Shown piece after piece: positions 15,729 to 61,558 of a stretch of DNA of 64,000 nucleotides. The notes beneath the pieces are model-generated. The model worked only from the letters and a program-made list of their open reading frames with translations, was not told the origin of the DNA and made no database searches. Location of the stretch: NCBI GenBank assembly GCA_002269645.1, contig NIVC01001020.1, positions 310,001-374,000 on the forward strand, written 5' to 3'. A program made the translations under genes and the position numbers. The first letter of the stretch is position 1, and every line of letters starts with the position of its first letter. The stretch comes from Macrostomum lignano. Taxonomy: Eukaryota.

Positions 15729-18700
15729 CAAGGGTCGGTAAATGCTTTTTTACCGTAGGGGCCAGGCAGAGAAACCAGGGAGAGAGGGGAAGAAATAGGG
15801 AAGATAGAGGAGAGATAGGAAAAAAGAAGAGTTGAGGGAATAAAGGAAAAGAGAAAAGACTAAAGGAGAGGACAGGGGAAAGAAGGGAAAGGGAGGAGAA
15901 GAGAAGAAGAGAGAAAGGAGCGAAGAGGAGAGGAGAGACGAGAAGAGAGGAGAAGAGAAGAGAGGAGAAGAGAAGAGAAGAGAAGAGAGGAGAAGGGAAG
16001 AGAAGAGAAGAGAAGAGAAGAGAAGAGAGGAGAAGGGAAGAGAAGAGAAGAGAGGAGAAGGGAAGAGAAGAGAAGAGAAGAGAAGAGAGGAGAAGGGAAG
16101 AGAAGAGAAGAGAAAAGAAGAGAAGAGAAGAGAAGAGAGGAGAAGAGAAGAGAAGAGAAGAGAGGAGAAGAGAAGAGAAGAGAAGAGAAGAGAAGAGAAG
16201 AGAAGAGAAGAGAAGAGAAGAGAAGAGAAGAGAGAAGAGAAGAAGAGAGAAGAAGAGAGAAGAGAGGAGAGAAGAGAAGAGAAAAGAGAAGAGAGAAGAG
16301 AAGAGAGGAGAAGGGAAGAGAATAGAAGAGAAGAGAAGAGAAGAGAGGAGAAGGGAAGAGAAGAGAAGAGAGGAGAAGGGAAGAGAAGAGAAGAGAAGAG
16401 AAGAGAGGAGAAGGGAAGAGAAGAGAAGAGAAAAGAAGAGAAGAGAGGAGAAGGGAAGAGAAGAGAAGAGAAGAGAAGGGAAGAGAAGAGAAGAGAAAAG
16501 AAGAGAAGAGAAGAGAAGAGAGGAGAAGAGAAGGGAAGAGAAGAGAGGAGAAGGGAAGAGAATAGAAGAGAAGAGAAGAGAAGAGAGGAGAAGGGAAGAG
16601 AAGAGAAGAGAGGAGAAGGGAAGAGAAGAGAAGAGAAGAGAAGAGAGGAGAAGGGAAGAGAAGAGAAGAGAAAAGAAGAGAAGAGAAGAGAAGAGAGGAG
16701 AAGAGAAGAGAAGAGAAGAGAAGAGAGGAGAAGGGAAGAGAAGAGAAGAGAGGAGAAGGGAAGAGAAGAGAAGAGAAGAGAAGAGAGGAGAAGGGAAGAG
16801 AAGAGAAGAGAAGAGAAGAGAAGAGAAGAGAGGAGAAGAGAAGAGAAGAGAAGAGAAGAGAAGAGAAGAGAAGAGAAGAGAAGAGAGAAGAGAAGAAGAG
16901 AGAAGAAGAGAGAAGAGAAGAGAAAAGAGAAGAGAGAAGAGAAGAGAGGAGAAGGGAAGAGAAGAGAAGAGAGGAGAAGGGAAGAGAAGAGAAGAGAAGA
17001 GAAGAGAAGAGAGGAGAAGGGAAGAGAAGAGAAGAGAGGAGAAGAGAGGAGAAGGGAAGAGAAGAGAAGAGAGGAGAAGGGAAGAGAAGAGAAGAGAAGA
17101 GAAGAGAGGAGAAGGGAAGAGAAGAGAAGAGAGGAGAAGGGAAGAGAAGAGAAGAGAGGAGAAGGGAAGAGAAGAGAAGAGAAAAGAAGAGAAGAGAAGA
17201 GAAGAGAGGAGAAGAGAAGGGAAGAGAAGAGAAGAGAGGAGAAGGGAAGAGAAGAGAAGAGAAGAGAAGAGAGGAGAAGGGAAGAGAAGAGAAGAGAAAA
17301 GAAGAGAAGAGAAGAGAAGAGAGGAGAAGAGAAGAGAAGAGAAGAGAAGAGAGGAGAAGGGAAGAGAAGAGAAGAGAGGAGAAGAGAAGAGAAGAGAAGA
17401 GAAGAGAAGAGAAGAGAAGAGAGGAGAAGGGAAGAGAAGAGAAGAGAGGAGAAGGGAAGAGAAGAGAAGAGAAGAGAAGAGAGGAGAAGGGAAGAGAAGA
17501 GAAGAGAAGAGAAGAGAAGAGAAGAGAGGAGAAGGGAAGAGAAGAGAAGAGAAGAGAAGAGAGGAGAAGGGAAGAGAAGAGAAGAGAAGAGAAGAGAAGA
17601 GAAGAGAGGAGAAGGGAAGAGAAGAGAAGAGAAGAGAAGAGAAGAGAAGAGAGGAGAAGGGAAGAGAAGAGAAGAGAGGAGAAGGGAAGAGAAGAGAAGA
17701 GAAGAGAAGAGAGGAGAAGGGAAGAGAAGAGAAGAGAAGAGAAGAGAAGAGAAGAGAGGAGAAGGGAAGAGAAGAGAAGAGAAGAGAAGAGAAGAGAGGA
17801 GAAGGGAAGAGAAGAGAAGAGAAAAGAAGAGAAGAGAAGAGAAGAGAGGAGAAGGGAAGAGAAGAGAAGAGAAGAGAAGAGAGGAGAAGGGAAGAGAAGA
17901 GAAGAGAAGAGAAGAGAAGAGAGGAGAAGGGAAGAGAAGAGAAGAGAAGAGAAGAGAGGAGAAGGGAAGAGAAGAGAAGAGAAAAGAAGAGAAGAGAAGA
18001 GAAGAGAGGAGAAGAGAAGAGAAGAGAAGAGAAGAGAGGAGAAGGGAAGAGAAGAGAAGAGAGGAGAAGAGAAGAGAAGAGAAGAGAAGAGAAGAGAAGA
18101 GAAGAGAAGAGAAGAGAGGAGAAGGGAAGAGAAGAGAAGAGAAGAGAAGAGAGGAGAAGGGAAGAGAAGAGAAGAGAAAAGAAGAGAAGAGAAGAGAGGA
18201 GAAGAGAAGAGAAGAGAAGAGAAGAGAGGAGAAGGGAAGAGAAGAGAAGAGAGGAGAAGGGAAGAGAAGAGAAGAGAAGAGAAGAGAGGAGAAGGGAAGA
18301 GAAGAGAAGAGAAAAGAAGAGAAGAGAAGAGAAGAGAGGAGAAGAGAAGGGAAGAGAAGAGAAGAGAGGAGAAGGGAAGAGAAGAGAAGAGAAGAGAAGA
18401 GAGGAGAGAAAAGAAGAGAAGAGAGAAGAGAGAAGAGAAGAAAAGAGAAGAGAAGAGAAGAGAGAAGAGAGGAGAGAAAAGAAGAGAAGAGAGAAAAGAG
18501 AAGAGAAGAGAACAGAAGAGAAGAGAAAAAAAGAGAGAAGAGAAGAGAAGCGAGAAAGGAGCGGAGAGGAGAGAGAGGATTTGTCAGAGAAGGAGGTGAA
18601 GACAGGAAAGAGGAGAGGAGAGAGGAGATAAATAAGAAAAGAGCAGAGCAGAGACACAAACCCCGAGTGGGCCAGATTGCTGCTCTGAAGTTTCAAAGGA

Positions 18701-20702: not shown

Positions 20703-21758
20703 AAATGAGTGACCGTGGCGCTAAAGTGAGTGACTGCGACGCTAAAATGAGTGAGTTTGGTGCTGAAATGCGTGACAGTGGCGCTAAAATGAGTGACTGT
20801 GGCGCTAAAATGAGTGAGTTTGATGCTGAAATGAGTGACAGTGACGCTAAAATGAGTGACTGTGGCGCTAAAATGAGTGACAGTGGCGCTAAAATGAGTG
20901 ACAGTGGCGCTAAAATGAGTGACAGTGGCGCTAAAATGAGTGAGTTTGATGCTGAAATGAGTGACAGTGGCGCTAAAATGAGTGAGTTTGGTGCTGAAAT
21001 GAGTGACAGTGGCGCTAAAATGAGTGAGTTTGGTGCTGAAATGAGTGACAGTGGCGCTAAAATGAGTGAGTTTGGTGCTGAAATGAGTGACAGTGGCGCT
21101 AAAATGAGTGAGTTTGGTGCTGAAATGAGTGACAGTGGCGCTAAAATGAGTGAGTTTGGTGCTGAAATGAGTGACAGTGGCGCTAAAATGAGTGACAGTG
21201 GCGCTAAAATGAGTGACAGTGGCGCTAAAATGAGTGACAGTGGCGCTAAAATAAGTGACAGTGGCGCTAAAATGAGTGACAGTGGCGCTAAAATGAGTGA
21301 GTTTGATGCTGAAATGAGTGACAGTGGCGCTAAAATGAGTGAGTTTGATGCTGAAATGAGTGACAGTGGCGCTAAAATGAGTGACAGTGGCGCTAAAATG
21401 AGTGACAGTGGCGCTAAAATGAGTGAGTTTGATGCTGAAATGAGTGACTGTGGCGCTAAAATGAGTGACAGTGGCGCTAAAATGAGTGACAGTGGCGCTA
21501 AAATGAGTGACAGTGGCGCTAAAATGAGTGACAGTGGTGCTAAAATGAGTGACAGTGGCGCTAAAATGAGTGAGTTTGGTGCTGAAATGAGTGACAGTGG
21601 CGCTAAAATGAGTGACAGTGGCGCTAAAATGAGTGACAGTGGCGCTAAAATGAGTGACAGTGGCGCTAAAATGAGTGAGTTTGATGCTGAAATGAGTGAC
21701 AGTGGCGCTAAAATGAGTGAGTTTGATGCTGAAATGAGTAACTGCAGCGCAAAATGAG
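20703..21758. repeat. 21-bp minisatellite with two interspersed unit types (GAGTGACAGTGGCGCTAAAAT and GAGTGAGTTTG[G/A]TGCTGAAAT), about 50 copies
   Basis: Direct reading. ORFs on both strands arise because 21 is a multiple of 3. Confidence 0.95.
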
Positions 21759-22321
21759 TGTGAAGTCGTTGAGTGTAAAGGCATATCAGCCACAGTAACC
21801 CAGTTGCAGCCAATCCTCTGTAATTATATTTTATATAAATAAATACGGTATATGACTTCTATTCTATCTTGAATCCCATCTCTTTCAAACTTCGCTCGTG
21901 CCTCTCCACAGTGGGAACTGGTACAACCCTACTAACCCTATATTGCGTTCACATTTCACCCACTTGTGCCGCATCCCCTTAGTAGCCTCAGCGGTGGTGC
22001 GAGAGCATTCTGTTGCAATCGAAAAGTTCACTTTGTAACCTTCCCGGTTTATCATTCGCTTTTACGCAGAAATGCATGGCCACTTGGTTGCAGCAAAAAT
22101 TATTCTCTTTCAGCGCAATGTTGAACTGCACCTGCGGAAGCACCTGCGGAATTTGCAATGCCCAGGAAATTCCTTCACGAACTATTCGACGAAAGCTTCG
22201 AATAGTGCATGGCTACATTCGGTGTGCAACGTTTTACGGCAAGTCTGTGTTATTCGGGGAGTAGAAGAAATGTTCGGGGTTGTGCGTTGCAATTTTAATT
22301 TGAGGGGATCGCAACCCTGAG

Positions 22322-22954
22322 CGCCCCCTGTCTCTTGGTTCGCGTTGGCACCCGTCTTTTTTGGTGGGCGCCCCTGTCTCTTGGTTCGCGTTGGCACCCG
22401 TCTTTTTTGGTGGGCGCCCCTGTCTCTTGAGTTGGGCGCCCCTGTCTCCTGAGTTGGGCGCCCCTGTCTCTTGAGTTGGGCGCCCCTGTCTCTTGAGTTG
22501 GGCGCCCCTGTCTCTTGAGTTGGGCCCCCCTGTCTCTTGAGTTGGGCGCCCCTGTCTCTTGAGTTGGGCGCCCCTGTCTCCTGAGTTGGGCGCCCCTGTC
22601 TCTTGAGTTGGGCGCCCCTGTCTCTTGAGTTGGGCGCCCCTGTCTCTTGAGTTGGGCGCCCCTGTCTCTTGAGTTGGGCGCCCCTGTCTCTTGAGTTGGG
22701 CGCCCCTGTCTCTTGAGTTGGGCGCCCCTGTCTCTTGAGTTGGGCGCCCCTGTCTCTTGAGTTGGGCGCCCCTGTCTCTTGAGTTGGGCGCCCCTGTCTC
22801 TTGAGTTGGGCGCCCCTGTCTCCTGAGTTGGGCGCCCCTGTCTCCTGAGTTGGGCGCCCCTGTCTCCTGAGTTGGGCGCCCCTGTCTCCTGAGTTGGGCG
22901 CCCCTGTCTCCTGAGTTGGGCGCCCCTGTCTCCTGAGTTGGGCGCCCCTGTCTC
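22322..22954. repeat. 22-bp minisatellite (GGGCGCCCCTGTCTC[T/C]TGAGTT)n
   Basis: Direct reading. Each unit contains the palindrome GGGCGCCC. The left-most units are diverged. Confidence 0.95.
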
Positions 22955-24104: not shown

Positions 24105-24860
24105 TCAGGGGTAGAAGGCGGTGCTGAAGAACAGTCCATGCTGTCGGCCCATCCGCATCATTCCAGCCGACATAGGAGTCTGGTAGGACTTGTCGTAGGA
24201 GCCCGGCGCCGGGACCTTGTTGTAGGATGAGACAAACCGTGGGCAGCTGGAACGGAACGATGAGCGCACGCCCTGCTGGCTCAGCGTGCTCCGACTCGAA
24301 TCGTACGCACCTGGAGGCGGTCCTTCGCGCGGCTCGAACTCCTTGATGACGCGACGGGATCGCGACTTGAAGCAGGAGCCTCTGGCTGGCTCGGGGTCGA
24401 CGCGGATGCTGTGGTAGGTCTCCACGTTGTACTGCCCGGGTGTCAGGTTCGACAGCTGTCGATCTACCAGACCTTCGGTCAGTGCGTCCAGCGAGGATTT
24501 CTTCGAGTTGCGGAAACCGTAGCTGCGAATGTCTTTGCTCATCTCGTCAGTGAAGCTGCGGTGGCTGTAGGCTCCAGGCGGCACTCCGCTGCCTCCACCG
24601 CCGCCCAGGCCCGTTGCCGCTTCAAGGTTGCGCTGCCGGCCGGAGCTCTTGAAGGTAGACGAAGGATAGTTGACTCGCTGTATGGAGCTGACCTCGCGCG
24701 GCTCGTACTGACCGACTGCCGGGTAGCGGTTGAGCTGGTCCCGCCACCACGCGCTGCGGTCGGTGGGCTTGTACCGGTCCCAGTCGTTCAGGGGCGCTGG
24801 CGGCAGTACTCTTGGCTGGTGCTGGCGTCTCTCAGTAGGCAGCGCTTCCAGCTGGCTCAT
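24105..24860 (-). CDS. PG-rich repeat (SHIPPO/STPG/ODF3-like) ciliary or sperm-tail microtubule-associated protein
   Basis: Repeats PAVGQYEP, TPGQYN, PPPGAYD and PAPGSYD, with C-terminal GRQHGLFF. The start has a strong Kozak context (GCCGCCATG). Confidence 0.75.
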   Translation of the reverse strand: MSQLEALPTERRQHQPRVLPPAPLNDWDRYKPTDRSAWWRDQLNRYPAVGQYEPREVSSIQRVNYPSSTFKSSGRQRNLEAATGLGGGGGSGVPPGAYSHRSFTDEMSKDIRSYGFRNSKKSSLDALTEGLVDRQLSNLTPGQYNVETYHSIRVDPEPARGSCFKSRSRRVIKEFEPREGPPPGAYDSSRSTLSQQGVRSSFRSSCPRFVSSYNKVPAPGSYDKSYQTPMSAGMMRMGRQHGLFFSTAFYP

Positions 24861-30165: not shown

Positions 30166-30865
30166 GGTTGTAGCCTTAGTGCGGAGTTGTAGCCTAGTAG
30201 GGGGTTGTAGCCTAGTGGGGGTTGTAGCCTAGTGGGGGTTGTAGCCTAGTGGGGGTTGTAGCCCAGTGGGGGTTGTAGCCCAGTGGGGGTTGTAGCCTAG
30301 TGTGGGTTGTAGCCTAGTGGGGGTTGTAGCCCAGTGGGGGTTGTAGCCTAGTGGGGGTTGTAGCCCAGTGGGGGTTGTAGACTAGTGGGGGGTTGTAGCC
30401 CAGTGGGGGTTGTAGCCTAGTGAGGGGTTGTAGCCTAATGGGGGTTGTAGCCTAGTGGGGTTGTAGCCTAGTGGGGGTTGTAGCCTAGTGTGGGTTGTAG
30501 CCTAGTGTGGGTTGTAGCCTAGTGTGGGTTGTAGCCTAGTGGGGTTGTAGCCCAGTGGGGGTTGTAGCCTAGTGTGGGTTGTAGCCTAGTGGGGGTTGTA
30601 GCCCAGTGGGGGTTGTAGCCCAGTGGGGGTTGTAGCCCAGTGGGGGTTGTAGCCTAGTGGGGGTTGTAGCCTAGTGTGGGTTGTAGCCTAGTGGGGGTTG
30701 TAGCCCAGTGGGGGTTGTAGCCTAGTGGGGGTTGTAGCCCAGTGGGGGTTGTAGACTAGTGGGGGTTGTAGCCCAGTGGGGGTTGTAGCCTAGTGGGGGT
30801 TGTAGCCTAGTGGGGGTTGTAGCCTAGTGGGGGTTGTAGCCTAGTGAGGGGTTGTAGCCTAGTGG
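30166..30865. repeat. 17-bp minisatellite (GTTGTAGCCTAGTGGGG)n, about 40 copies, derived from the SINE 5' end / A-box
   Basis: The last unit reads directly into the SINE body (GTTGTAGCCTAGTGG-TTAGAGCGTGGGACTCACGAC). Confidence 0.93.
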
Positions 30866-39918: not shown

Positions 39919-40167
39919 TTTAATGCTATATTTCTTGATCAAAAACTATTTAAGCTCCGATATCAGAAAACCAGTTTTTATTATATAGATATGCTAATCT
40001 AATACAGTTATACATAAACAGAAAATTCAAAATTCGGGGCCCGTATCAGTGGGGGGGGGATAACTGCTATTTGATGAGCGCCCAGCCAATGAGAGTTCTG
40101 GAATTTTTGGAAGAGCGATCAATCCACTGCCAAAAATAAATTTTATGGTAAAAAATCACTGTTTCTT

Positions 40168-40640
40168 ACCCACTGTTTCACCCAATGTTTCACCCACTGT
40201 TTCACCCACTGTTTCACCCACTGTTTCACCCACTGTTTCACCCACTGTTTCACCCACTGTTTCACCCACTGTTTCACCCACTGTTTCACCCACTGTTTCA
40301 CCCACTGTTTCACCCACTGTTTCACCCACTGTTTCACCCACTGTTTCACCCACTGTTTCACCCACTGTTTCACCCACTGTTTCACCCACTGCTTCACCCA
40401 CTGTTTCACCCACTGTTTCACCCACTGCTTCACCCACTGTTTCACCCACTGCTTCACCCAATGTTTCACCCACTGTTTCACCCACTGTTTCACCCAATGT
40501 TTCACCCACTGTTTCACCCACTGTTTCACCCACTGCTTCACCCAATGTTTCACCCACTGTTTCACCCACTGTTTCACCCACTGCTTCACCCACTGTTTCA
40601 CCCACTGTTTCACCCAATGTTTCACCCACTGTTTCTCACC
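40168..40640. repeat. 12-bp minisatellite (CCCACTGTTTCA)n, about 39 copies
   Basis: Direct reading. The VSPT, HPLF and KQWV ORFs are artefacts. Confidence 0.97.
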
Positions 40641-40651
40641 CATTGTTTCTC

Positions 40652-41208
40652 GGAGAGTGGAGAGAGGGTGAGAGTGGAGAGAGGGTGAGAGTGGAGAGAG
40701 GGTGAGAGTGGAGAGAGGGTGAGAGTGGAGAGAGGGTGAGAGTTGAAAGAGACTGAGAGTAGAGGGTGAGAGTAAAGAGAGGCTGAGAGTTGAAAGAGAC
40801 TGAGTGAAGAGAGGATGAGAGTGGAGAGAGGGTGAGAGTTGAAAGAGACTGAGAGTAGAGGCTGAGAGTAAAGAGAGGCTGAGAGTTGAAAGAGACTGAG
40901 AGTAGAGGGTGAGAGTGGAGAGAGGGTGAGAGTTGAAAGAGACTGAGAGTGAAGAGAGGCCGAAAATGGAGAGAGGTTGAGAGTAGCCGTAGAGGGTAAG
41001 AGTGGACAGATGCTGAGAGTTGAAAGAGACTGAGTGAAGAGAGGATGAGAGTGGAGAGAGGGTGAGAGTTGAAAGAGACTGAGAGTAGAGGGTGAGAGTA
41101 AAGAGAGGCTGAAAGTGGAGAGAGGCTGAAAGTAAAGAGAGACTGAAAGTGGAGAGAGGCTGAGAGTGGAGAGAGGGTGAGAGTGGAGGGAGGGTGAGAG
41201 AGGAGACA
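40652..41208. repeat. Purine-rich degenerate tandem repeat (e.g. GGAGAGAGGGTGAGAGT, 17-bp core)
   Basis: Direct reading. Confidence 0.88.
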
Positions 41209-43804: not shown

Positions 43805-45763
43805 TCAGGGACTGGTATTAGAGGCATAGGGTATAATAACGAACCCATTTTCGGTTGGAATACAAATGGCCTTGCCAGTTGGATGCACAGTAACAGACGT
43901 AGCATGACACCTCACGATATAGTAGCCAATTCCTAGGGTGGAACTGGGGTAAGGATACTTGTACAAATCTCGCGAAAACTTAAGACTATGACCTGTGACA
44001 GAGCCATCATCGTGCGTTGAAGTTATTAGTAGTACCCTTGTACCAACCATAGCACAGTTGTTAGGAGCCGTGGACCTAAAAGCAAGGTCAGCGCAACTGG
44101 GGCTGGAAAGAGTTTGCATAAACTGCAATTGTGATAACGCGTGTTCAAAAAAAAACCTTGTTTTTTTGGTTCGACTCTTAAGCACGTTAAGATAGGCTTC
44201 AAACGGAAAGGTTGAAAAATTGTCTAGCTCTCCAAACTGCTTGACGCACTCTGCTAAATGCAGAATCGCATGAAAATTGTACGACACGGCATGTTCACCA
44301 TACAGTACAGGAACTTGGCTAACAAAGGTTTGGATACAATGAGCAGCGTGGTCTCTCAAATGCCTGAACCGCGGAGAGCAAAAGACATAAATTGAAAAAT
44401 GCAGTAGCATGAAATGATCATAGTAAAGGCCAGACAGAATGTCTTTAAAAAGAAACGGACCAAGGTACAACAAATGAAGACGATACTCAGTGGCTTTAAA
44501 ATTGACTAATTCAGTATCGAATCGTCGTGGGCGTCGTTGAAATTCAGAGGGGATATACTTGGCTAGGCTATGGGAGAGATCTGAAAGCCTTGTCAGCTGA
44601 TCAGCAGTAACACGACCACGAATCCGAAAACCTTTTACTAAACTAAACATCCAGGAAAAAATACGGCGAGTAATGCCAAGAATGGCAGCATGCTGATAGT
44701 CTAGAGGAAAACCAGTTAGCAACCCTGTGATTTCATGCAGAGGGGACAGAGACGATTGATTATTCTCTCTCAAAGCACTGTAATCCTCATCAGTACGAGG
44801 CTCTCCAGGAACAGTGGAGTACACAACTCGACTTAACAGCGTTCGACCAACTGAGCGGCAGAAACCACATCCTCGATGGGCTGTATGCGATGCAATGCAT
44901 TGGAAGTAAGCACGAGCAACTGCATCACAGATGAATGCCACATTGCCGAGCTTTACTCTTCCATTCTGCACCATCATTCCAACTGACTTCAAAACCTTGA
45001 TCTCGTTAATGAGCTTACGGAGGAAAGGCTCAATTGGTGGCTTTCCAACTCCACAGTATAGCCCTACTGGATAGACTCGACTGACAGGCCTTCCGACACT
45101 AGAGAACTGAATCAAAATTGGCCAAAATTCTGTCTTTGAACTCTTCCAAAGTGGCAAGCCATCGATGTTGACTTTAAGGTCCAGAAAATTGTCTGTTTCG
45201 CTACGTAACTTGACACTCATCAACTTCAAGGCTATTGGAATACTTTTGCTTATCGAGAGATAGGCAAAGTTCCCTCCTGGCATGGCTTCCTTGCCAACAG
45301 TTGAGTGGGACATGTTGCTCTTCTTAAGTTGCTTAAAATTAGCAGGAACGTCGTGGCCCAGTCGGAGGAGCAGCTGAAGTATCATGGTCACAGCTCGCTG
45401 GGGGAGACAAAACAAAAGATAGATCTTCCACAATTCGCTAATCACAGAGCAACCTTGGCCAACTCCAGTTCCATCTCCATTATCAGTGCCAGCTTCATCT
45501 GCGCCATCGACAGCCTCGCAGTCATCATCATCGGAATCGTCATATGACTCACCAAACAGTTGGTCATGGACAAAATCCTCATCAACCAACAGTTTATACA
45601 AGCCATCGTTGTTGACAACGGACTCAATTAAGTGATCCATGCCCACAAACTCACCACAAGAACAATCAGTACTCGCGTCCTCCCCGAGATCCATGGCTAC
45701 CTCACCAGTTGCAGCATCAGAAGAATCCAAACCAAAGTCTATCCCTGCTAGGTACTTATCCAC
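43805..45763 (-). CDS. CACTA/EnSpm-type DDE transposase (main exon; probably begins at a splice acceptor near 45813)
   Basis: VNIDGLP..FWPIL; FICDAVAR..HTAHRGCGFC; DYQH..LG; YNFHAILHL; FPFEAYL. Confidence 0.87.
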   Translation of the reverse strand: MDKYLAGIDFGLDSSDAATGEVAMDLGEDASTDCSCGEFVGMDHLIESVVNNDGLYKLLVDEDFVHDQLFGESYDDSDDDDCEAVDGADEAGTDNGDGTGVGQGCSVISELWKIYLLFCLPQRAVTMILQLLLRLGHDVPANFKQLKKSNMSHSTVGKEAMPGGNFAYLSISKSIPIALKLMSVKLRSETDNFLDLKVNIDGLPLWKSSKTEFWPILIQFSSVGRPVSRVYPVGLYCGVGKPPIEPFLRKLINEIKVLKSVGMMVQNGRVKLGNVAFICDAVARAYFQCIASHTAHRGCGFCRSVGRTLLSRVVYSTVPGEPRTDEDYSALRENNQSSLSPLHEITGLLTGFPLDYQHAAILGITRRIFSWMFSLVKGFRIRGRVTADQLTRLSDLSHSLAKYIPSEFQRRPRRFDTELVNFKATEYRLHLLYLGPFLFKDILSGLYYDHFMLLHFSIYVFCSPRFRHLRDHAAHCIQTFVSQVPVLYGEHAVSYNFHAILHLAECVKQFGELDNFSTFPFEAYLNVLKSRTKKTRFFFEHALSQLQFMQTLSSPSCADLAFRSTAPNNCAMVGTRVLLITSTHDDGSVTGHSLKFSRDLYKYPYPSSTLGIGYYIVRCHATSVTVHPTGKAICIPTENGFVIIPYASNTSP

Positions 45764-46229
45764 CTCGCGAAGAACCTTACGTCGAGAAGCCTTAAAAAAT
45801 CGGGGGTTGATATCTGGTTTAGAAAACTACTAACTGATCCTTAAGCATTTAGTCTATTTTTACACTATAGGAAACCAACTATTGTGACAGACTACACATA
45901 CAAAAAAATGAAACCGATAAAGCTGACACTGACACTGAAAACACTGACAAAATGGAAAAATAATTGTCAATTAGCTAGTAACAAAAATGAGCGCAATTGA
46001 CAGTTGTGCCACAGCTTTACAACTGTTCCACAACTGTCATTTATTCTGTTCGGCAAAGTAATATATACTCATTAGCATAATTTTGTCACAATTGTGGCAA
46101 AGGGCAGTTGAATACAATCATAGATGTGTAAAAGGGCATAGTTGTAGCCAGTTGGAAGAATCGCAGCTTTTTCTAGGACAATTATTTCCTACCGGGGTCA
46201 CCATTTTTATTGAGTGCAACACTATTCAG

Positions 46230-47678
46230 TCAATTTCTACTGTCTTCCGAAACGTCAGCTTCATCATCGGAGCTCTGCTGTTCCTGGAACTCTGGGGCAA
46301 AAACTCTCGATCGCTTTGCATTGGGGTCTGACTGTGGGGGCTTCCTTGTCCTTGCTTGTGCCACTTTTAGAGCCGCCACAATCGCCTCTTCAACAAGCTT
46401 GGCATTCAGGCTGGTGTCGATGTTGCACACATACTCCTTGATGAAGTCCTCCAGCTTGCCTTTGATCTTGATCTTCCCATCTGTACCATGCCTGTTACAC
46501 CTTGCCAGAACTTCGTCCGTAAACAATGCACGCAATGTGCGACGTACCAGTTCTTTGCCCGAGCCTCCAGCAAAGCGATTCAGATACTGCCCGATGTTAC
46601 GCTTCTTGTCAGGTTGATCAAGCGAAGAAATTAATTCCTCAACACCCGCCATCGATGAGACCTGATTCATTGAAGCTTTAGGAAACGAGACACCTGCAGA
46701 CTGTTCAGACGGCAGAACACTCATCCTATCATTGAATGATTTGAGTTGACTCTCCAGAGTGAGAACCTTTTTGAGAATGACAGAGCACAGAAAATTAGCT
46801 GACTCAATCGTGTTCGGTCTGATTTTATGTCGCTCCAGTAGCCTGTCAACGCTGTCAGTTGAAAAGCTCCCAGCAAATGAGACACTCTTGCTAGCATCAG
46901 AGCGCTTAGAATTGGGATCGAAATTTGCTCCATCCCTATGACTACACTGTGGCATGGGTGATGACAGTATTGGTGTTGGATGCTGGCTGCTTTCTGGCAT
47001 GGAGTATGACGAAGGTGGCTCTTGATGGCTTGTTACCACAGCTGCTGACATCGGTTGCAGGTTTCCTCTTGGCGTGTGTGGCGACAGTGAAGGTGGCGGT
47101 GCAGACAGTGGTGGCATTTGTGGCATGGAAACAGGACTAAATCTTGAAACAGGAGAAGCAACTAGTGACAACCTGGCAGAATTCCCAACAGTTTCTGAAT
47201 GCCTTTTGGTTGAAGCAGACCTTTTGGAGTTTTCACTCAATGGCTGGGAACTACTGTTAATATGCTGCAAGTTGCTCTCTCCTGTTGCAAGTCTTTCCAA
47301 ATCTGTGGCACTGTCAGACAAATCAGTATCAAAGCAGTTTAATGGCTTCCAGACAAACCGCTTTGATGGATCAGACACACGGCTAACATAATCTAGATCA
47401 CGTAACATTCGCTCAATTGGCCACTTTTTGTATGTCTTATGTTCGGTGACATGATTCAAAACAGGCTGAAGAGATGATTTTGCATGACTAGCTTGTACAA
47501 CTATTGCTGAATGGGGCTTACCATCATACTGTGCAGAGACAATCACAACTTCTGATGGAGCCTTAACAAGTGCCTCAAAGTGACTTAGGCTAAAGTCAGT
47601 CTGGTTGCTATGAAGAATCTCAAAAGTTTTGTCACTTGGAAAATATAGTAAGAGGTGTGTAATATCTTGGAAAGCCAA
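46230..47678 (-). CDS. CACTA accessory ORF with a DUF4806-like C-terminal domain
   Basis: S/P-rich linker, a coiled segment (LKKVLTLESQLKSFN), then GGSGKELVRRTLRALFTDEVLARCNRHG. The frame opens at acceptor TTCCAG|GCT near 47687. Confidence 0.7.
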   Translation of the reverse strand: MAFQDITHLLLYFPSDKTFEILHSNQTDFSLSHFEALVKAPSEVVIVSAQYDGKPHSAIVVQASHAKSSLQPVLNHVTEHKTYKKWPIERMLRDLDYVSRVSDPSKRFVWKPLNCFDTDLSDSATDLERLATGESNLQHINSSSQPLSENSKRSASTKRHSETVGNSARLSLVASPVSRFSPVSMPQMPPLSAPPPSLSPHTPRGNLQPMSAAVVTSHQEPPSSYSMPESSQHPTPILSSPMPQCSHRDGANFDPNSKRSDASKSVSFAGSFSTDSVDRLLERHKIRPNTIESANFLCSVILKKVLTLESQLKSFNDRMSVLPSEQSAGVSFPKASMNQVSSMAGVEELISSLDQPDKKRNIGQYLNRFAGGSGKELVRRTLRALFTDEVLARCNRHGTDGKIKIKGKLEDFIKEYVCNIDTSLNAKLVEEAIVAALKVAQARTRKPPQSDPNAKRSRVFAPEFQEQQSSDDEADVSEDSRN

Positions 47679-53769: not shown

Positions 53770-54613
53770 TCACAAGCGAACGGCGAAATCTCCAGCCACG
53801 GCCCTCAGCTCGTGCGGCACAGCGGCGAATCTCAGCAGGTAGCAGGCGTTCAGGTGGAACAGCACGGCCTGGCAGTCGGCATGGCAGCAAATCAGACACA
53901 AATTCAGGCTCATCACGGGCTGCACGGTGCGGTAGAAGGGCCCGCTGGAGGAGGTCATGTTCAGGTAGACTCGATCAGCAAAAGTGAAGTATCCGCTGAC
54001 TGTTAGGGACAGAGAGAGTTCACAGCAATTCCGGTGATACTGACCCAATGAGCCATCAGAATTCAGTTAGCATTGCACTGTGTGTCGTGACGTGTGACGT
54101 GTACGAGCGTATCAAAGTTTAAATCGGCTTTGACGCTAGCTTGCTCATACTCTGAGTTTACTTTCTCATGACAAATCAATAAATACTGTTAGAACAATTG
54201 AACTCACCTGGACGAAGGTAGACCTGCCGGTACACGGAGTTTCTCCAAGCTGATCCGCAGATTTGGGCAGAGTTGCCGGCGCAGTTCATGTTGCAGTCGC
54301 TGTTGGCAGCCTGGCCGTGGATGCCATAGGAGTTTCCGCAGCGGCATTCGCTTGCATACTGCGCGCCAAAGTACTCAAAGTTTCCATAGGCGCAAATCTC
54401 GCTGCACAGTTCCAGAGTCATCTCGCTGAGGTCGACAAATGAACCTTTCAGGTGAGACACCGAGTACGGCCCGATGGTGGACCTGCCTTCGAGTCCGCCG
54501 AGGTCTCGAGTTTCGGTGTCCACGAAGCAGCCCACCAGGCCGAATTCGGCGCCCAGCGAGCAGCCGAAAGCGACGCAGCAGCAGAGAAGCGACAGAATTG
54601 ATGAGGCCTGCAT
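53770..54613 (-). CDS. Secreted WSC-domain protein with a C-terminal PAN/apple-like module; exons 54613-54208, 53999-53770
   Basis: Signal peptide; WSC pattern LVGCFVD..MTLELCSEIC..YFGAQYASECRCG..CNMNCAGNSAQICGSAWRNSVY; phase-1 intron; C-terminal CLICCHADCQAVLF..ACYL. Confidence 0.83.
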
Positions 54614-56455: not shown

Positions 56456-59400
56456 CTACTTATTGAGTGACAGCTTGTCAAGGACGAGTCGAAGTTCGTC
56501 GCCATCCAGGGTAACGCGTTTCTCAGAGATTATGGTCTCGATTTGGTGCCTGCAGAATTCCCTGTGTTCCAACGACTGGCTGTAGTGGGCCAGGGTAAGA
56601 AGCTCCTCTAAATCCGGGTCTTCTTGCAGTTCAACACGCCACTCATCAAAAATGTCGATTGGAAGATCTCGTAGAAGCTCAGCTTGGAGACTCCAGCTGA
56701 GGCAGCGAAAATTCACGTACAGGTGGGCGGAGCCAGGCTGCGACAGTCTGGCTTTCAACAGAGTCTGAGTGAACTCAGGGAGGAACGGCAGTCGAGGCGG
56801 ACTGTCGCAGGGGAGGCAAAACCTCCACGCCCAGTCTTCCTCAATATCGAAAAAGTCTTTACTCAGAAGGTTTTCAGGCTTCCAACCTCTCTGCACTTGA
56901 TGCGATTGCAGCTTCTTCAGGAGGATGTCAGCCTGTGCAGAATCCTTGGATTTCACATACGCCATGACTTTCATGCACAAGACTGCGCATTTACACCACT
57001 GAAGCTGATCCAGGATATTAAGCTGTTCCATTAGCTCGTCCTTGTCAGTTGCTTCTGACTGCAGATCAACCATGCATTGGTTCACCATGCAGTAGACCGC
57101 AATGGATGAATCTGCAGGTTGTGTGGCTTGAAAAGGTTTTTCTACTTTTCTGGTTAGAGGTAGCAAAGTGAACGGGTGAAAGTAGAAGTCCTCCGACTGT
57201 AGAGACATCATCTGTTCTTTCATTGCCTCATACACCTGTCTTATATTGCTTCTAATCTCTCTGAATTGGTCCGAAACTTTTGTCCTTGCGTTGACTAAGT
57301 CACCTCCGACTCCAGCATTTTTGAAGTACAACGGAGCGTCAAGCATGAAGAAGTGCGGCATGCAGACATCAGGCGAGCTGCCGGAAGCAACGAAGCTTAG
57401 CATCGTGTCGAGCGATTCATTTAGCAGATCGACCAAGTTCTCCACCGAATGCCAAACGCTGCTATCTTTGCCTTGCTTCTCCAGCATGAACAGGAGCAAA
57501 GTCTTGGCGTGGTAGGTCTTGAGACCTGGTGTTTGCAAATTGATGGGCATGTATATCTTAAATATGTATTTCAAGATGACGAAAAGTTGGCCTTGTACTT
57601 CGCTTACGCTCTCCAAGATTTCTTTTTCATGGAAGCTGAAACTCACTCTGAGTTCGTTCGGCGAGTTGGGTCGAGTCGCTCTAACGAGGTGCACTGGGGG
57701 CAGATCTCGGTTAGGAAGAAGCTTTGCAATTCGGTCCTGACAGAAGTCGCTGCAACATTGGATAGCTTCGCAGATGTCTTCTGTGGGTCGAACACCGCTC
57801 GCTGGGGTCGTCATCGCCGGCTGGCTGCCTGAAAAGAGACAACAACAGTTTATACCTTAGTCGAATTGTTGCCAGGGCTCAGTTAGTACTTTAAATCAGT
57901 CTTTGATCTTCGTTGCGGCTTGACTATTAAAGTTGTAAGGTTTAACAGAGCACAAGCAAGCGTTACTGATAAGCTGGGCAAAACTTACCCGATCCAGCTT
58001 GCACCTGAGCGTGGCCTTCTCTAACCTGAAGCAGTGGAGAATTTTTGCAATTTTCAGACCTTTGGCAGCCTCCTTTCAGGTGAGTTACTTGTCTAGAGTC
58101 CATCGTAGTCCAGTCGATGTCGGATTGAGCCCCTACTCTGCCGTTCACCTGCACGAGACTGTTCCCCCAGCCTTCTCGGTAGCTGCCAGTCATCTGCCTC
58201 TGACCATCTGAAGAGCTTTGAACCAGCGTTTGCAGAGTGCGACCCAGTACTTGCTGACACTTTGCCCTGCGCAGACTGAATCCTGCCTGGGTAAGCTGCT
58301 GGTGCCAACTCCGACTTAGCTCTCTGTTTCTAAATTTGTTAAAGCTAAATATTCAGTAACACATACGATCGTATTTAAAAAAACAGAAGCAAAATTTTCT
58401 TAGAAACATGCTCTCAATAGTAGATTGTGTCTATGGTTTTGGCACCAGGACAATGCATTTAGACAACCTCCGAATCGCTTACCGAGTTTGTTGACGCAAA
58501 AATCCATTGTCGTGTTTTCCGAAGTTCTAAAAGCACAAAATTAATTTTAAAACACTTAAATTCGTTTTTGTACATGGAAGACATTGTAAGAAGGAGGATG
58601 AGTGAAACTCAAAAAATTTCCTGAATTTCATTGGGGCCAATTTTCGTTGCAAGCATGTTAGCTATGGTTGCTTGTCTAAACGGATTTCGCAAGGATTTTG
58701 CTCTTGCATTGCATACATTAAATAGAGCTTTACCATAGACAAACTTGGTCGAGAGAAACAACATTACCAGAACAAAACCGGCCTCCAGTGAAATTTTCAC
58801 GACTTGTTACATCTTTTTGCATTCAATTTCAACCAAAGTCGCATTCAATTTCAGCAAGCTGGCATTCAAAATCGGCAATCTAAATTAGCCATCTAAATCT
58901 TCATTCAATTTAAGCATGCTCGCATTCCATATCAGCGAACCACATTCAGCGAACTGCATTCAATTCAATTTTGCCTCAAACTTGTCTGCTCGTCTATGGG
59001 TAAACTTTATTGACGCGTGCAGATTTTGCGCTCAATTTCGGCAATCTGCATTCAAATTCAGCAAAATTTTATTAACTTAACGTAAAACAAAACGAACGTC
59101 GTCCAATACATGTACAGTGTCATAGGGAACAAAAACAGAAAATCGAAGTCACGTCAAGTGTGCTTCAGTCCCCATTGGTGTTCATGAGCTCTGCAAGTTG
59201 TAAATAGTCCTGCCCTGTCTCGTGGGCATCGATAAGGCGGGCTCTATCTCCGTCAGAAACTCGTGCGTATGGTCCTCGACCTCTTCTTCTTCTCACTCAA
59301 TTTCTTCGACAGCTTGTTCTTTGATGATCTCATTGTCACTCATATCTATGTCGATATCTACACTTGCAGTAAAAAAAACAGAAAGCTGGGGTGAAGTGAA

Positions 59401-61558
59401 ATGAAAGGATCGACAAGCCTCTTTGGATGTAAACTGTACATGGAATTGAACATTCGTCTGTGGTTGAAATCGAATGTGTTTTGCTGAATTGAATGCAGAT
59501 TGCCGAAATTGAGCGCAAAATCTGCACGCGTCAATAAAGTTTACCCATAGACGAGCAGACAAGTTTGAGAAAAAATTGAATTGAATGCAGTTCGCTGAAT
59601 GTGGTTCGCTGATATGGAATGCGAGCATGCTTAAATTGAATGAAGATTTAGATGGCTAATTTAGATTGCCGATTTTGAATGCCAGCTTGATGAAATTGAA
59701 TGCGACTTTGGTTGAAATTGAATGAAAAAGGTGTAGTGTCCTTTCGTAGTCTCTGAATTTGCATTGATATTCAGAAAAAAAGAAATTTATATTGATTAAA
59801 AGACGCACCCATTTTGCAGCACCGGAAGCACTTGGTAGTTATGATATTGATTAGCCAGCTGCTCGCATGTCATGCCTTGGTGATCTTGATGACTTGGGTC
59901 TGCTCCTTCGTTTATCAGAACCTTGGCAGATAAAACATGGCCCGCTATGCACGCTCGAGACAGAGCCGTCCGACCTTGGCCATCTACAGCCCTCACAGAC
60001 GCACCGTGAAGCAGCAATTCATTGATGACGTCGTGCTGACCCGCATCTGCTGCCAGCATTAAAGCGGTTGCTCCTGTGCTATTCTGCTGATCGACATGCG
60101 TGTCGCTATAGTATTGGCTTCTGATTATCGTGAGTGCCAGTGCGACAAGACTGTGCGTGATGGACAGGCAGAGCAGTTGAGCGATGCGAACGGCATGCAT
60201 TTTAGACAGCGTATATCGTAAAACTGAATCGTCACCAGGAATCTCCAGGTGCTGAGAGAGCAGCTTCAGCAGTGGAGAGTTGCGGAGCAGCCAGTCAGCT
60301 GGAATGGCTGCCACCGCTTTTCCGTCCGAGCTTGAGGAATAAAATCGGAACTGACCCCGACTCCGGCTTTTGAAGCAGTGGACACAAGAAACTCGTTGAG
60401 TCTGCGGATATCCATCTTTTCTGCAACAGTCTCCGTCGCGGACCTCCAGTACTCGTCTTTCAGCAACATGCTGGAAGGAATATACTTGCCGACAGTCGCG
60501 ACAACATCCCAGTTTTTCGTATCTGCTGCAGCCCCTGCAGTTATCATGCAGCTACTTTCGAGAATGCTTTGATCGTCAATGATCTCAATGAAAGTTTTCA
60601 CTTCATTCCATTCGTTTCTGTCTGCAAGGATTTCTACTGCTTTCAGGCAGCACTGATCCCTCATGTTTTTGTCTTCAATGGTTAGAGCCAGAAAAACCAG
60701 ATCTTCGCACTGAGCAGATGAATGTGCTAAGTCTGCAAGCTTCATGCAGCACAGATACCTGCGACTGGGGTCAGCGATCAGCTCAACTAGAGACTTCGCG
60801 ATATCCCAACTGCCAGATAATACAAAGGATTCAGCAAAATCGATGCATTTTTTATCTCTAAGTGCTGGATTAGAAATATTTCTTAAAAGCGAAGTAGCTG
60901 CTTCCAAGCAATTGGATGCAGCAGATTGCTCTGCATAGGAGATGCAGAAAGAATCCCGGCCGTCCGAATCAGAAATCATCTGCCCAAGAGAGGCCACACA
61001 GTTCATATTGCCATGGCTGGACGCAGATTCTGCAGCGTCTATGCAGTATTGATCTTTGAGTTGCCTATCGCGAATTGTACCTGCTAGAAAAATAATGAGT
61101 TCATCGTTAAAAAGATCGTTATTTGCAAGTGCAGGAGCGTCTTCAAAAGTTTCGTCTGTTGTGCCAGCGTTTTCCGAAACGGCCTTTATGTAAGATGAAC
61201 AGAAGTCATCTCGCAGTTGTTCGTCAGAGATGCTTTGCACCAAAAAAGTCACAACATTCCAGTGCTGATTTCCTGCAGCGATCCAGGCTGCTTCCGCACA
61301 ACAACTATCTTTACTGCTTTTGTCGAAAAAGAATTCCATCAGAGCAGCGACAACTTCTCCGTGGCCATTGGCTGCTGCAGCTTTTGTCGCCTCCGTGCAA
61401 CACTTGTCCGAGCTGTCTCTGTCCGAAATCTTTTGCAAATATTTTTCCAGATCTTCTCTTGTACCACTGGCGGCGGCTTTGACTGCATTTTCTGCTGCAT
61501 TCTTCTCCAAAATATCTTCTATTTTGCTTTCCAGGAAGTTTCGAGCACGATTGAACAT
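56456..61558 (-). CDS. Ankyrin-repeat cGAS-like receptor (cGLR / Mab-21 nucleotidyltransferase); exons about 61558-59809, 58329-57989, 57828-56456; one frameshift near 60300
   Basis: About 10 degenerate 33-aa ankyrin-like repeats, then canonical ANK repeats (TALMLAADAGQHDVINELL, TALSRACIAGHVLSAKVL). Phase-2 splice (QNG|NRELSR). NTase motifs TGSYREG..SDID. Phase-1 splice (AGSG|SQPAM). Third acidic residue in EDICEAI. Mab-21 motifs HLV..ELRVSFSFHEK, LKYIFK, KTYHAKT and MPHFF. Confidence 0.85.
58810..59733. mobile_element. Foldback/MITE-like element (924 bp) with ~255-bp near-perfect TIRs and TA target duplication, in cGLR intron 1
   Basis: 58810-59068 is the reverse complement of about 59479-59733. 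TA lies at 58808-58809 and at 59734-59735. Confidence 0.88.

What the first reader, a model, noticed from the sequence alone, without database searches (positions are those of the whole stretch)
56456..61558. Hidden ankyrin-repeat cGAS-like receptor (ANK-cGLR) with an intact catalytic triad
Seen: four separate ORF-track pieces join into one gene with phase-matched GT-AG introns. The domain order is about 10 divergent 33-aa repeats, canonical ankyrins, an NTase core (GSYREG, SDID, distal EDI), a Mab-21 C-lobe and about 200 aa of C-terminal helical region. Established: cGAS/OAS/Mab-21-fold enzymes use G-S plus three acidic residues to make cyclic or 2'-5' oligonucleotide second messengers in innate immunity. 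Inference: this is a possibly active nucleotide-messenger synthase whose long ankyrin solenoid could sense a protein or non-nucleic-acid ligand, or act as an autoinhibitory clamp, unlike canonical nucleic-acid-activated cGAS. It is the best candidate in this window for an undescribed immune system.
Basis: partly seen in the sequence, partly recalled or inferred. Interest (0 to 1): 0.88.

Follow-up and report, generated by a model that had tools for sequence, protein, structure and literature searches.

The report
Unannotated flatworm ankyrin-cGAS-like receptor paralogue
This is a real but unannotated and probably frameshifted copy of a large Macrostomum lignano gene family that fuses ankyrin repeats to a cGAS-like enzyme, and both the family and this type of fusion were already catalogued in 2023.

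Summary
The gene is real. It lies on the minus strand at 56456-61558 of a window that is exactly Macrostomum lignano contig NIVC01001020.1, positions 310001-374000.

**What holds up**
- It encodes about 10 degenerate 33-aa ankyrin-like repeats, three canonical ankyrins, a cGAS/Mab-21-fold core and a 235-aa C-terminal domain with no solved-structure match.
- The AlphaFold model of the core has pLDDT 88, and its best Foldseek hit is human cGAS.
- The catalytic residues G48-S49, D70/D72 and D131 are present. They are conserved in 84-100% of 67 paralogue domains. A profile alignment places D131 on human cGAS D319.
- Two of the three joins are canonical GT-AG introns. The 57989/57828 intron matches an annotated paralogue in position and phase; the 59809/58329 donor is about three residues away in the same phase.

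**What does not hold up**
- The first join, between the repeat array and the ankyrins, has no credible intron. A paralogue reads straight through it. The assembled gene therefore carries a frameshift: either an assembly error or a pseudogene.
- The system is not undescribed. Li et al. 2023 list ANK-cGLR fusions and cloned five M. lignano members of this family, including a 56%-identical paralogue. None is among their 15 characterised active enzymes.

Verdict: a new, possibly defective member of a known kind.

The parts
60327..61558 (-). Piece A. ATG at 61558, then about 10-11 degenerate 33-aa ankyrin-like repeats (acidic, pI 4.6) and a variable linker. In its own frame it runs to a stop codon at 60266-60268.
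   Evidence: ORF and translation. Repeat register by eye and by HMM. Pfam Ank_2 2.7e-4. Homologous to the strongly ankyrin-like repeats of M. lignano paralogues.
60326..60371 (-). Zone where the reading frame must shift from frame 1 to frame 0. It is a frameshift or indel, not a credible intron.
   Evidence: tblastn of paralogues ends in frame -1 at 60371 and resumes in frame -3 at 60326/60305. Candidate introns have weak donors compared with real short M. lignano introns. Paralogue P0004 has no intron here.
59809..60326 (-). Piece B: conserved linker (ADWLL...) plus three canonical ankyrin repeats.
   Evidence: Pfam Ank_2 5.2e-24 and Ank 1.7e-12. 52% identity to paralogues.
58330..59808 (-). 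Intron of 1479 nt (GTGCGT...TTTAG), phase 2. It contains a foldback element.
   Evidence: Sequence. Same phase as the P0004 intron at a nearby position. Inverted repeat arms of 241 nt, 98% complementary, at 58815-59055 and 59489-59729.
57989..58329 (-). Piece C: N-terminal spine helix and first half of the nucleotidyltransferase core. G48-S49 are codons 58187-58182. D70 is 58121-58119 and D72 is 58115-58113.
   Evidence: Translation. Conservation: G 67/67, S 66/67, D70 64/67, D72 61/67. Model strands E44-47 and E70-84.
57829..57988 (-). Intron of 160 nt (GTAAGT...CTCTTTTCAG), phase 1.
   Evidence: Sequence. Identical position and phase to the P0004 intron, HAQV..G|G|SQPA.
56456..57828 (-). Piece D. 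It holds the rest of the core, with D131 at codon 57778-57776, and the Mab-21 C-lobe (Pfam region 57577-57344). It ends with a family-specific 235-aa C-terminal domain (57166-56459) and the stop TAG at 56458-56456.
   Evidence: Pfam PF20266. hhalign places D131 on cGAS D319. C-terminal domain model pLDDT 84, with no PDB match better than E 0.26.

Best explanation
This is an unannotated, divergent paralogue of the Macrostomum lignano ankyrin-repeat cGAS-like receptor family (cGLR, Mab-21 fold). It is at most 58% identical to any annotated copy.

The encoded protein would be about 1,150 aa. Its parts, in order, are:
- an acidic array of about 10 degenerate ankyrin-like repeats;
- three canonical ankyrins;
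- a bilobed cGAS-type nucleotidyltransferase with the G-S loop, the DxD pair and the third Asp;
- a family-specific C-terminal helical domain.

Inferred mechanism: like other cGLRs, the core uses the three acidic residues to hold two metal ions. It joins nucleotide triphosphates into a cyclic or linear oligonucleotide signal once a ligand rearranges the active site. The ankyrin solenoid is the likely ligand-binding or partner-binding module. The near-neutral core and very acidic whole protein argue weakly against nucleic-acid activation.

As assembled, the gene has a frameshift between the repeat array and the ankyrins. This copy therefore makes the full protein only if that shift is an assembly error.

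Shown: identity, fold, motifs, exon structure and the frameshift. Inferred: catalysis, the ligand, and the role of the ankyrins.
For: - **Family:** about 40 full-length M. lignano homologues with Ank plus Mab-21_C. There are 130 clusters at 50% identity, and every named full-length one is M. lignano.
- **Fold:** AlphaFold pLDDT 88.2 and pTM 0.91. Foldseek top hits are human cGAS (1e-6), MAB21L1, MB21D2, MiD51, CdnD and DncV.
- **Sequence:** the family profile hits cGAS at 1.2e-10 and cGLR1 at 7e-10. hhalign gives probability 98.8% and E 1.2e-16, aligning PAMT..RPTEDICEA with cGAS SPAVTL..ISVDITLAL.
- **Catalytic residues** are conserved through 29-58% divergence: G48 67/67, S49 66/67, D70 64/67, D72 61/67, D131 56/67.
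- **Spacing** of D72 to D131 is 58 residues. That fits the published cGLR motif [DE]h[DE]h X50-90 h[DE]h.
- **Splice sites** are canonical, and paralogue P0004 has introns at the same or a nearby position in the same phase.
- **Locus:** the window is identical to NIVC01001020.1.
- **Charge:** pI is 7.7 for the core and 5.2 for the whole protein, against 9.1 for the human cGAS core.
Against: - The frameshift at 60371-60326 has no credible intron.
- No gene model or protein from this locus is in any public set. This is compatible with a silent or dead copy.
- Pfam's Mab-21 nucleotidyltransferase model (PF03281) does not match at all. Only Mab-21_C matches, barely above its cutoff.
- The GS-to-DxD loop is about 8 residues longer than in cGAS.
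- The residues flanking D131 in this copy (E, I) only half fit 'h[DE]h'.
- Five family members were cloned by Li et al., but none is among their 15 characterised active enzymes.
[quoted passage not shown] A receptor for any signal is unknown.
- I could not inspect model coordinates, so the metal-site geometry is unchecked.
Confidence: 0.6

Rival explanations
1. It is a recent pseudogene. The frameshift is real and the locus is not expressed. It is a decaying copy in a rapidly duplicating family, so it does nothing.
For: - The frame change has no credible intron.
- The paralogue reads through as one exon.
- There is no annotated model and no matching protein in 15 billion sequences.
- The locus sits among transposons and satellites.
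Against: - There is only a single disruption in about 1,150 codons.
- All four pieces are otherwise free of stops. The chance of that is about 6e-11 for each long piece.
- All catalytic and family-invariant residues are kept, and both real introns keep canonical sites.
- A one-base indel in a long-read assembly would look the same.
Confidence: 0.35
2. It is a non-catalytic Mab-21-type scaffold or adaptor, like MAB21L1, MB21D2 or MiD49/51. The cGAS-like fold would bind a nucleotide or a partner, and the ankyrin and C-terminal domains would assemble a signalling complex. No second messenger is made.
For: - MAB21L1, MB21D2 and MiD51 are among the top structural matches.
- Some paralogue models carry a caspase or kinase directly on the same chain. 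The caspase fusion is joined by short canonical introns. This suggests signalling by proximity rather than by a diffusible messenger.
- No M. lignano member is among the 15 characterised active cGLRs.
Against: G-S, DxD and the third Asp are retained in 84-100% of 67 highly diverged paralogues. That is hard to explain without catalysis. [quoted passage not shown]
Confidence: 0.2
3. There are two separate products. One is a 429-aa repeat-only protein from piece A, ending at the stop at 60266-60268. The other is an ankyrin-Mab-21 protein from B-C-D, started at an internal Met (MHAVRIAQ...) or by trans-splicing.
For: Several annotated paralogue models start just before the canonical ankyrins and lack the repeat array, for example P0018, P0020 and P0029. 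The frame-1 ORF has its own stop.
Against: Full-length paralogues encode both parts in a single exon. Homology in frame 0 starts upstream of any Met. The short models may simply be truncated annotations.
Confidence: 0.1

Closest known systems
Macrostomum lignano ANK-cGLR paralogues. Examples: PAA68676.1 / BOX15_Mlig016402g1 and PAA93208.1, which are samples 93 and 92 in Table S3 of Li et al. 2023.
   Same: Same species, same domain order (33-aa repeats, ankyrins, cGAS-like core, C-terminal domain) and same motifs (GSYxEGW, SDIDW, RPxxD, LRVSFSF, YHAKT). The 57989/57828 intron has the same position and phase in paralogue P0004.
   Different: - Only 40-58% identical.
- The N-terminal repeats are far more degenerate (Ank_2 2.7e-4, against 1e-33 to 5e-92 in paralogues).
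- It starts MFNRAR rather than MGQxxS.
- It has an insertion of about 25 aa and a frameshift in the linker.
- It is unannotated.
ANK-fused cGLRs of the coral Stylophora pistillata, and the 'ANK-cGLR' architecture class of Li et al. 2023 (Fig. 1C, S2A, 4C)
   Same: Ankyrin repeats appended to a cGAS-like nucleotidyltransferase with a predicted complete active site.
   Different: Different phylum. I did not compare sequences directly. No function has been reported for the ankyrin part in either case.
Human/mouse cGAS and Drosophila cGLR1
   Same: Bilobed fold, G-S loop, acidic triad, the WRLSFS/EK and YHxKT motifs of the C-lobe, and the third Asp aligned to D319.
   Different: - 12-16% identity in the human and mouse cGAS structure alignments.
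- The GS-to-DxD loop is longer.
- No match to the Pfam Mab-21 N-domain model.
- The core is near-neutral rather than basic.
- There are added ankyrin and C-terminal domains.
- A conserved Cys/His set lies in the N-lobe instead of the cGAS zinc thumb (its role is untested).
MAB21L1, MB21D2 and MiD49/51 (Mab-21-fold proteins with no shown messenger synthesis)
   Same: Same fold, with comparable Foldseek scores.
   Different: Mab21L1/2/3 are described as lacking a predicted functional active site (Li et al. 2023). That MiD49/51 also lack a complete triad is my own knowledge, not tested here. This family keeps the triad.

Membership tests
cGAS-like receptors (cGLR; Mab-21 / CD-NTase fold) | Bilobed cGAS/Mab-21 nucleotidyltransferase fold | tested here: met
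   AlphaFold pLDDT 88.2. Foldseek against human cGAS gives E 1e-6, probability 1.00 and TM 0.47-0.54 normalised by target length. hhalign probability 98.8%.
cGAS-like receptors (cGLR; Mab-21 / CD-NTase fold) | G-[GS] loop after the first strand | tested here: met
   G48-S49 (GSYREG) come straight after model strand 44-47. G is present in 67/67 and S in 66/67 family domains.
cGAS-like receptors (cGLR; Mab-21 / CD-NTase fold) | [DE]h[DE]h metal-binding pair | tested here: met
   D70-I-D72-W lies at the start of model strand 70-84. Conservation is 64/67 and 61/67.
cGAS-like receptors (cGLR; Mab-21 / CD-NTase fold) | Third acidic residue, h[DE]h, 50-90 residues downstream | tested here: met
   D131 is 58 residues after D72, in model strand 129-138, and is aligned by hhalign to human cGAS D319. 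It is present in 56/67 domains. The flanks in this copy are E and I, so the upstream 'h' is not met.
cGAS-like receptors (cGLR; Mab-21 / CD-NTase fold) | Convergence of the three acids on a two-metal site in 3D | not testable with these tools
   Model coordinates are not exposed. Only the secondary-structure positions are consistent.
cGAS-like receptors (cGLR; Mab-21 / CD-NTase fold) | Match to Pfam Mab-21 (PF03281, N-domain) and Mab-21_C (PF20266) | tested here: inconclusive
   PF20266 scores 25.6 bits against a cutoff of 24.1. PF03281 has no hit even at E<=10.
cGAS-like receptors (cGLR; Mab-21 / CD-NTase fold) | Ligand-dependent synthesis of a nucleotide second messenger | not testable with these tools
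   This needs biochemistry. Five paralogues were cloned by Li et al. but are not among the 15 characterised active enzymes. Their TLC figure is not readable here.
cGAS-like receptors (cGLR; Mab-21 / CD-NTase fold) | A cognate receptor (STING or other) in the same genome | not tested
   No practical query was available. Li et al.'s cGLR/STING count table holds six platyhelminth rows; the four shown read all zeros. M. lignano is not in that table.
Ankyrin-repeat proteins | 33-aa helix-turn-helix repeats matching Ank profiles | tested here: met
   Piece B: Ank_2 5.2e-24 and Ank 1.7e-12. Piece A: weak (2.7e-4) but homologous to strongly ankyrin-like repeats in paralogues.
Intact protein-coding gene | One continuous reading frame after removal of canonical introns | tested here: not met
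   A frame change is needed at 60371-60326 and no credible intron is there.

The most novel reading that the evidence does not exclude
[quoted passage not shown] 2023). In this reading the ankyrin arrays are the variable sensors for non-nucleic-acid ligands. Output goes either through a nucleotide messenger to an unknown receptor, or directly through caspase or kinase domains fused to some paralogues. The window's gene would be one divergent sensor allele of that network.
Probability: 0.2. Interest if true: 0.7.

Novelty: new member of a known kind. Interest (0 to 1): 0.35.

Why it matters
On its own this locus adds one unannotated, possibly broken, paralogue to a family already listed as cGLRs. 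Its practical value is as an annotation fix for the M. lignano genome.

The wider family is more interesting:
- It has at least 130 clusters at 50% identity that appear restricted to Macrostomum.
- The catalytic residues are conserved and the ankyrin arrays are highly variable.
- Some copies carry fused caspase or kinase domains.

M. lignano is a transgenic, RNAi-tractable laboratory flatworm, so these questions can be tested.

Tried and rejected
- **Pfam on piece C alone and on the spliced Mab-21 part.** The nucleotidyltransferase-domain model gave no hit.
- **phmmer of the spliced Mab-21 part against PDB sequences.** Nothing.
- **Profile of whole proteins (A1) against PDB.** It was swamped by ankyrin hits and was uninformative. 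I replaced it with the trimmed alignment A2.
- **Search for a GT-AG intron at the A/B join.**
  - 28 frame-restoring candidates were listed.
  - All were rejected. Their donors (GTTTCT, GTCCGC, GTTCCG and so on) do not resemble real M. lignano donors (GTAAGG, GTTAGT, GTGAGT).
  - The one decent pair, donor 60355 GTCAGT with acceptor 60252, would delete about 33 residues, including a 22-aa segment homologous to paralogues.
- **Paralogues inside the window.** None.
- **Fold of the C-terminal 235 aa.** The model is confident, but no PDB relative scores better than E 0.26. Only generic helical-repeat noise appears.
- **Literature on Macrostomum with Mab-21 or cGAS.** Nothing beyond the Li et al. 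supplement.
- **Exact look-up of the ORF translations in the protein collection.** Absent.
- **Earlier idea that the window came from another Macrostomum species.** Rejected. The window is base-for-base M. lignano NIVC01001020.1 over the 23.7 kb compared.
Full report
**1. What is in the sequence**

The minus strand between 61558 and 56456 carries four long open pieces.
- Piece A runs from the ATG at 61558 in frame 1. Its own stop is at 60266-60268.
- Piece B (~60326..59809) is in frame 0.
- Piece C (58329..57989) is in frame 0.
- Piece D (57828..56459, stop TAG at 56458-56456) is in frame 1.

Pieces A and D are open for 468 and 466 codons. At the window's stop-codon frequency of 4.9%, the chance of either is about 6e-11.

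Piece A holds about 10-11 units of 33 aa with the register [KR]D..C..A..A....W..V..L....I.D.... Piece B has three canonical ankyrins (Pfam Ank_2 5.2e-24). Piece C carries GSYREG and SDID. Piece D carries the EDI motif and Pfam Mab-21_C (25.6 bits against a cutoff of 24.1), followed by 235 further residues.

**2. Gene structure**

The B/C junction is GG|GTGCGT ... AAATTTAG|A, phase 2, with an intron of 1479 nt. The C/D junction is GG|GTAAGT ... CTCTTTTCAG|G, phase 1, with an intron of 160 nt. Both are canonical and keep the frame.

I rebuilt the exon structure of the annotated paralogue P0004 from its genomic locus L001.
- Its last intron sits at exactly the same place and phase: HAQVAVGA|G|SQPA there, HAQVQAGS|G|SQPA here.
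- Its first intron leaves the ankyrin exon in the same phase, three residues away.
- P0004 has an extra 18-aa mini-exon (54 nt, frame-neutral). I could neither find nor exclude it in the window's 1479-nt intron.

The A/B join is different.
- Paralogue homology stops in frame -1 at 60371 and resumes in frame -3 at 60326/60305.
- P0004 encodes the equivalent region as one uninterrupted 1718-nt exon.
- None of the 28 frame-restoring GT..AG candidates has a donor like real M. lignano short introns: GTAAGG, GTTAGT and GTGAGT, from four introns of 73-102 nt in L004.
- The only decent pair (donor 60355, acceptor 60252) would remove about 33 residues, including a 22-aa segment that aligns with paralogues.

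I conclude that the assembled sequence has a frameshift in a variable linker. That linker also carries an insertion of about 25 aa relative to paralogues. The frameshift may be an assembly indel or a real mutation, and I cannot tell which.

**3. Where the window comes from**

The neighbouring ORF at 43808-45763 is 100% identical to M. lignano transposase BOX15_Mlig024569g1. The fetched locus L002 is record NIVC01001020.1, positions 343805-367527, reversed. It is base-for-base identical to window 33805-57527.

The window is therefore M. lignano assembly GCA_002269645.1, contig NIVC01001020.1, positions 310001-374000. The gene lies at record positions 366456-371558.

In L002 the only called gene is the transposase, although the locus covers the 3' kilobase of piece D. 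No protein more than 58% identical exists in the searched collections. The exact ORF translations are absent from the 15-billion-sequence collection. The gene is therefore unannotated.

**4. The family**
- The joined 1154-aa model finds about 40 M. lignano proteins at 34-57% identity with Ank plus Mab-21_C.
- An exhaustive HMMER search with the 570-aa Mab-21 part finds 130 clusters (50% identity level) at E<=1e-3, and 91 at E<=1e-10.
- All ten of the stronger hits I looked up are M. lignano, or in one case unnamed.
- The weak hits, which match the C-lobe only, include bivalve and hydrozoan Mab-21-like proteins.
- One 467-aa homologue comes from a JGI metagenome contig.
- A second paralogue, P0029, lies about 195 kb away on the same contig.

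**5. Is it a cGAS-like enzyme?**

Direct sequence search against PDB found nothing. A profile of 14 trimmed family domains hits cGAS (1.2e-10), Drosophila-type cGLR1 (7e-10) and MAB21L1 (4.7e-4). Those matches cover the C-lobe only.

AlphaFold2, run with a 31-sequence family alignment, gives a confident model (pLDDT 88.2, pTM 0.91). Its best PDB matches are human cGAS (E 1e-6, TM 0.47-0.54 by target length), MAB21L1, MB21D2, MiD51, CdnD and DncV.

I compared the family alignment by profile-profile search with cGAS/cGLR sequences taken from Table S3 of Li et al. The result was probability 98.8% and E 1.2e-16. It places SQPAMT...RPTEDICEA on cGAS SPAVTL...ISVDITLAL, so D131 corresponds to human cGAS D319.

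Across 67 family domains that share only 29-58% identity with the window copy, conservation is as follows:

| Residue | Present in |
|---|---|
| G48 | 67/67 |
| S49 | 66/67 |
| D70 | 64/67 |
| D72 | 61/67 |
| D131 | 56/67 |
| E130 | 3/67 (not conserved) |

In the model, G48-S49 follow strand 44-47, D70/D72 open strand 70-84, and D131 lies in strand 129-138. This is the expected topology. I could not read coordinates, so the metal-site geometry itself is unchecked.

Differences from cGAS:
- The GS-to-DxD loop is about 8 residues longer.
- Pfam PF03281 does not match.
- The core is near-neutral, pI 7.7 against 9.1 for the human cGAS core. The whole protein has pI 5.2.
- A conserved Cys/His set (H83, C88, C94, H106, C139, H160) may be a zinc site. 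This is inference only.

The C-terminal 235 aa fold confidently (pLDDT 84) but have no solved relative (best E 0.26).

**6. Comparison with what is known**

Li et al. [quoted passage not shown] They list ankyrin-repeat fusions as a recognised architecture (Fig. 1C, S2A; S. pistillata examples) and define the active-site motif used above.

Their Table S3 contains five M. lignano proteins (samples 89-93), cloned as Mab-21-only constructs.
- Sample 93, PAA68676.1 (BOX15_Mlig016402g1), is my hit P0009. It is 56% identical to the window's Mab-21 part.
- Sample 92 shows the same subfamily motifs, judged by eye from its printed sequence.
- None carries the 'Note' label that marks the 15 active enzymes chosen for in-depth study.

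The paper says 'many' enzymes were active and that 15 were selected. The TLC figure is not readable here, so activity of the M. lignano proteins is not established either way.

[quoted passage not shown] Its table of cGLR and STING counts per species holds six platyhelminth rows; the four shown read all zeros. M. lignano is not in that table.

I found no paper that studies this family further.

**7. Mechanism and rivals**

The most likely reading is that this family consists of ligand-gated nucleotidyltransferases. The main support is that the catalytic residues survive very deep divergence.

The ankyrin array is the obvious variable partner-binding or ligand-binding module. Between paralogues it ranges from near-perfect repeats to the degenerate acidic array seen here. 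Whether it senses or inhibits is untested.

For this particular copy, the main rival is that it is a young pseudogene: it has a frameshift and no annotation, and it sits among transposons and satellites.

A second rival is a non-catalytic scaffold. One hint in that direction is paralogues with a caspase or kinase on the same chain. The caspase fusion P0045 is a compact gene with short canonical introns, so it is probably real.

**8. Verdict**

One of the three joins is wrong. The claim of an undescribed system is not supported. This is a new, unannotated and possibly defective member of a known kind.

Noticed in passing
window 58815-59729 (inside the 1479-nt intron): A foldback or MITE-like element of 915 bp. 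Its terminal inverted repeats are 241 nt long and 98% complementary (58815-59055 and 59489-59729). This explains the mirrored short ORFs on both strands.
   Followed up: partly
window 15896-18550: A 2.65-kb (GAGAA)n purine-only satellite with 531 copies. It produces spurious ORFs of around 1,000 aa on the minus strand and a GC/AT skew of 1.0.
   Followed up: no
window 10688-11669, 20703-21760, 22365-22954, 30166-30865, 40157-41206: Several long minisatellite arrays with periods of 12-47 nt and 25-52 copies. They account for many of the long 'ORFs' in the window.
   Followed up: no
window 43805-47678 (-): A transposase gene with no Pfam match here. The 652-aa ORF at 43808-45763 is 100% identical to M. 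lignano BOX15_Mlig024569g1, which UniRef names a DUF4218 domain-containing protein. It has relatives in insects and spiders. This match identified the window's origin.
   Followed up: yes
window 13618-15249 (-): An ORF with a retroelement-type integrase (Integrase_H2C2 5.7e-16, rve 1.7e-14).
   Followed up: no
window 54248-54535 (-): An exon encoding a WSC (carbohydrate-binding) domain (Pfam 5e-17), just downstream of the gene. It is 44% identical to the N-terminus of the 2381-aa M. lignano model P0044, which looks like a merged WSC + ANK-Mab21 + RING model.
   Followed up: partly
M. lignano paralogues P0045 (locus L004), P0169, P0050 and P0019: Some family members carry a C-terminal ankyrin plus caspase (Peptidase_C14, about 1e-25) or a protein kinase domain after the Mab-21 module. 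In P0045 the parts are joined by canonical introns of 73-102 nt, so the fusion looks real.
   Followed up: partly
Family alignment; window codons for H83, C88, C94, H106, C139 and H160 of the 570-aa Mab-21 part: A conserved Cys/His set (57-62 of 67 paralogues) lies in the N-lobe. It may be a zinc site, at a different place from the cGAS zinc thumb.
   Followed up: no
N-termini of paralogues P0001, P0004 and P0007 versus window 61558: Three of the seven paralogues I read start MGQxxS, a possible N-myristoylation signal. The window copy starts MFNRAR and lacks it.
   Followed up: no
window 24105-24860 (-): An ORF with a weak SHIPPO (sperm-tail PG-rich) repeat match (2.6e-5).
   Followed up: no
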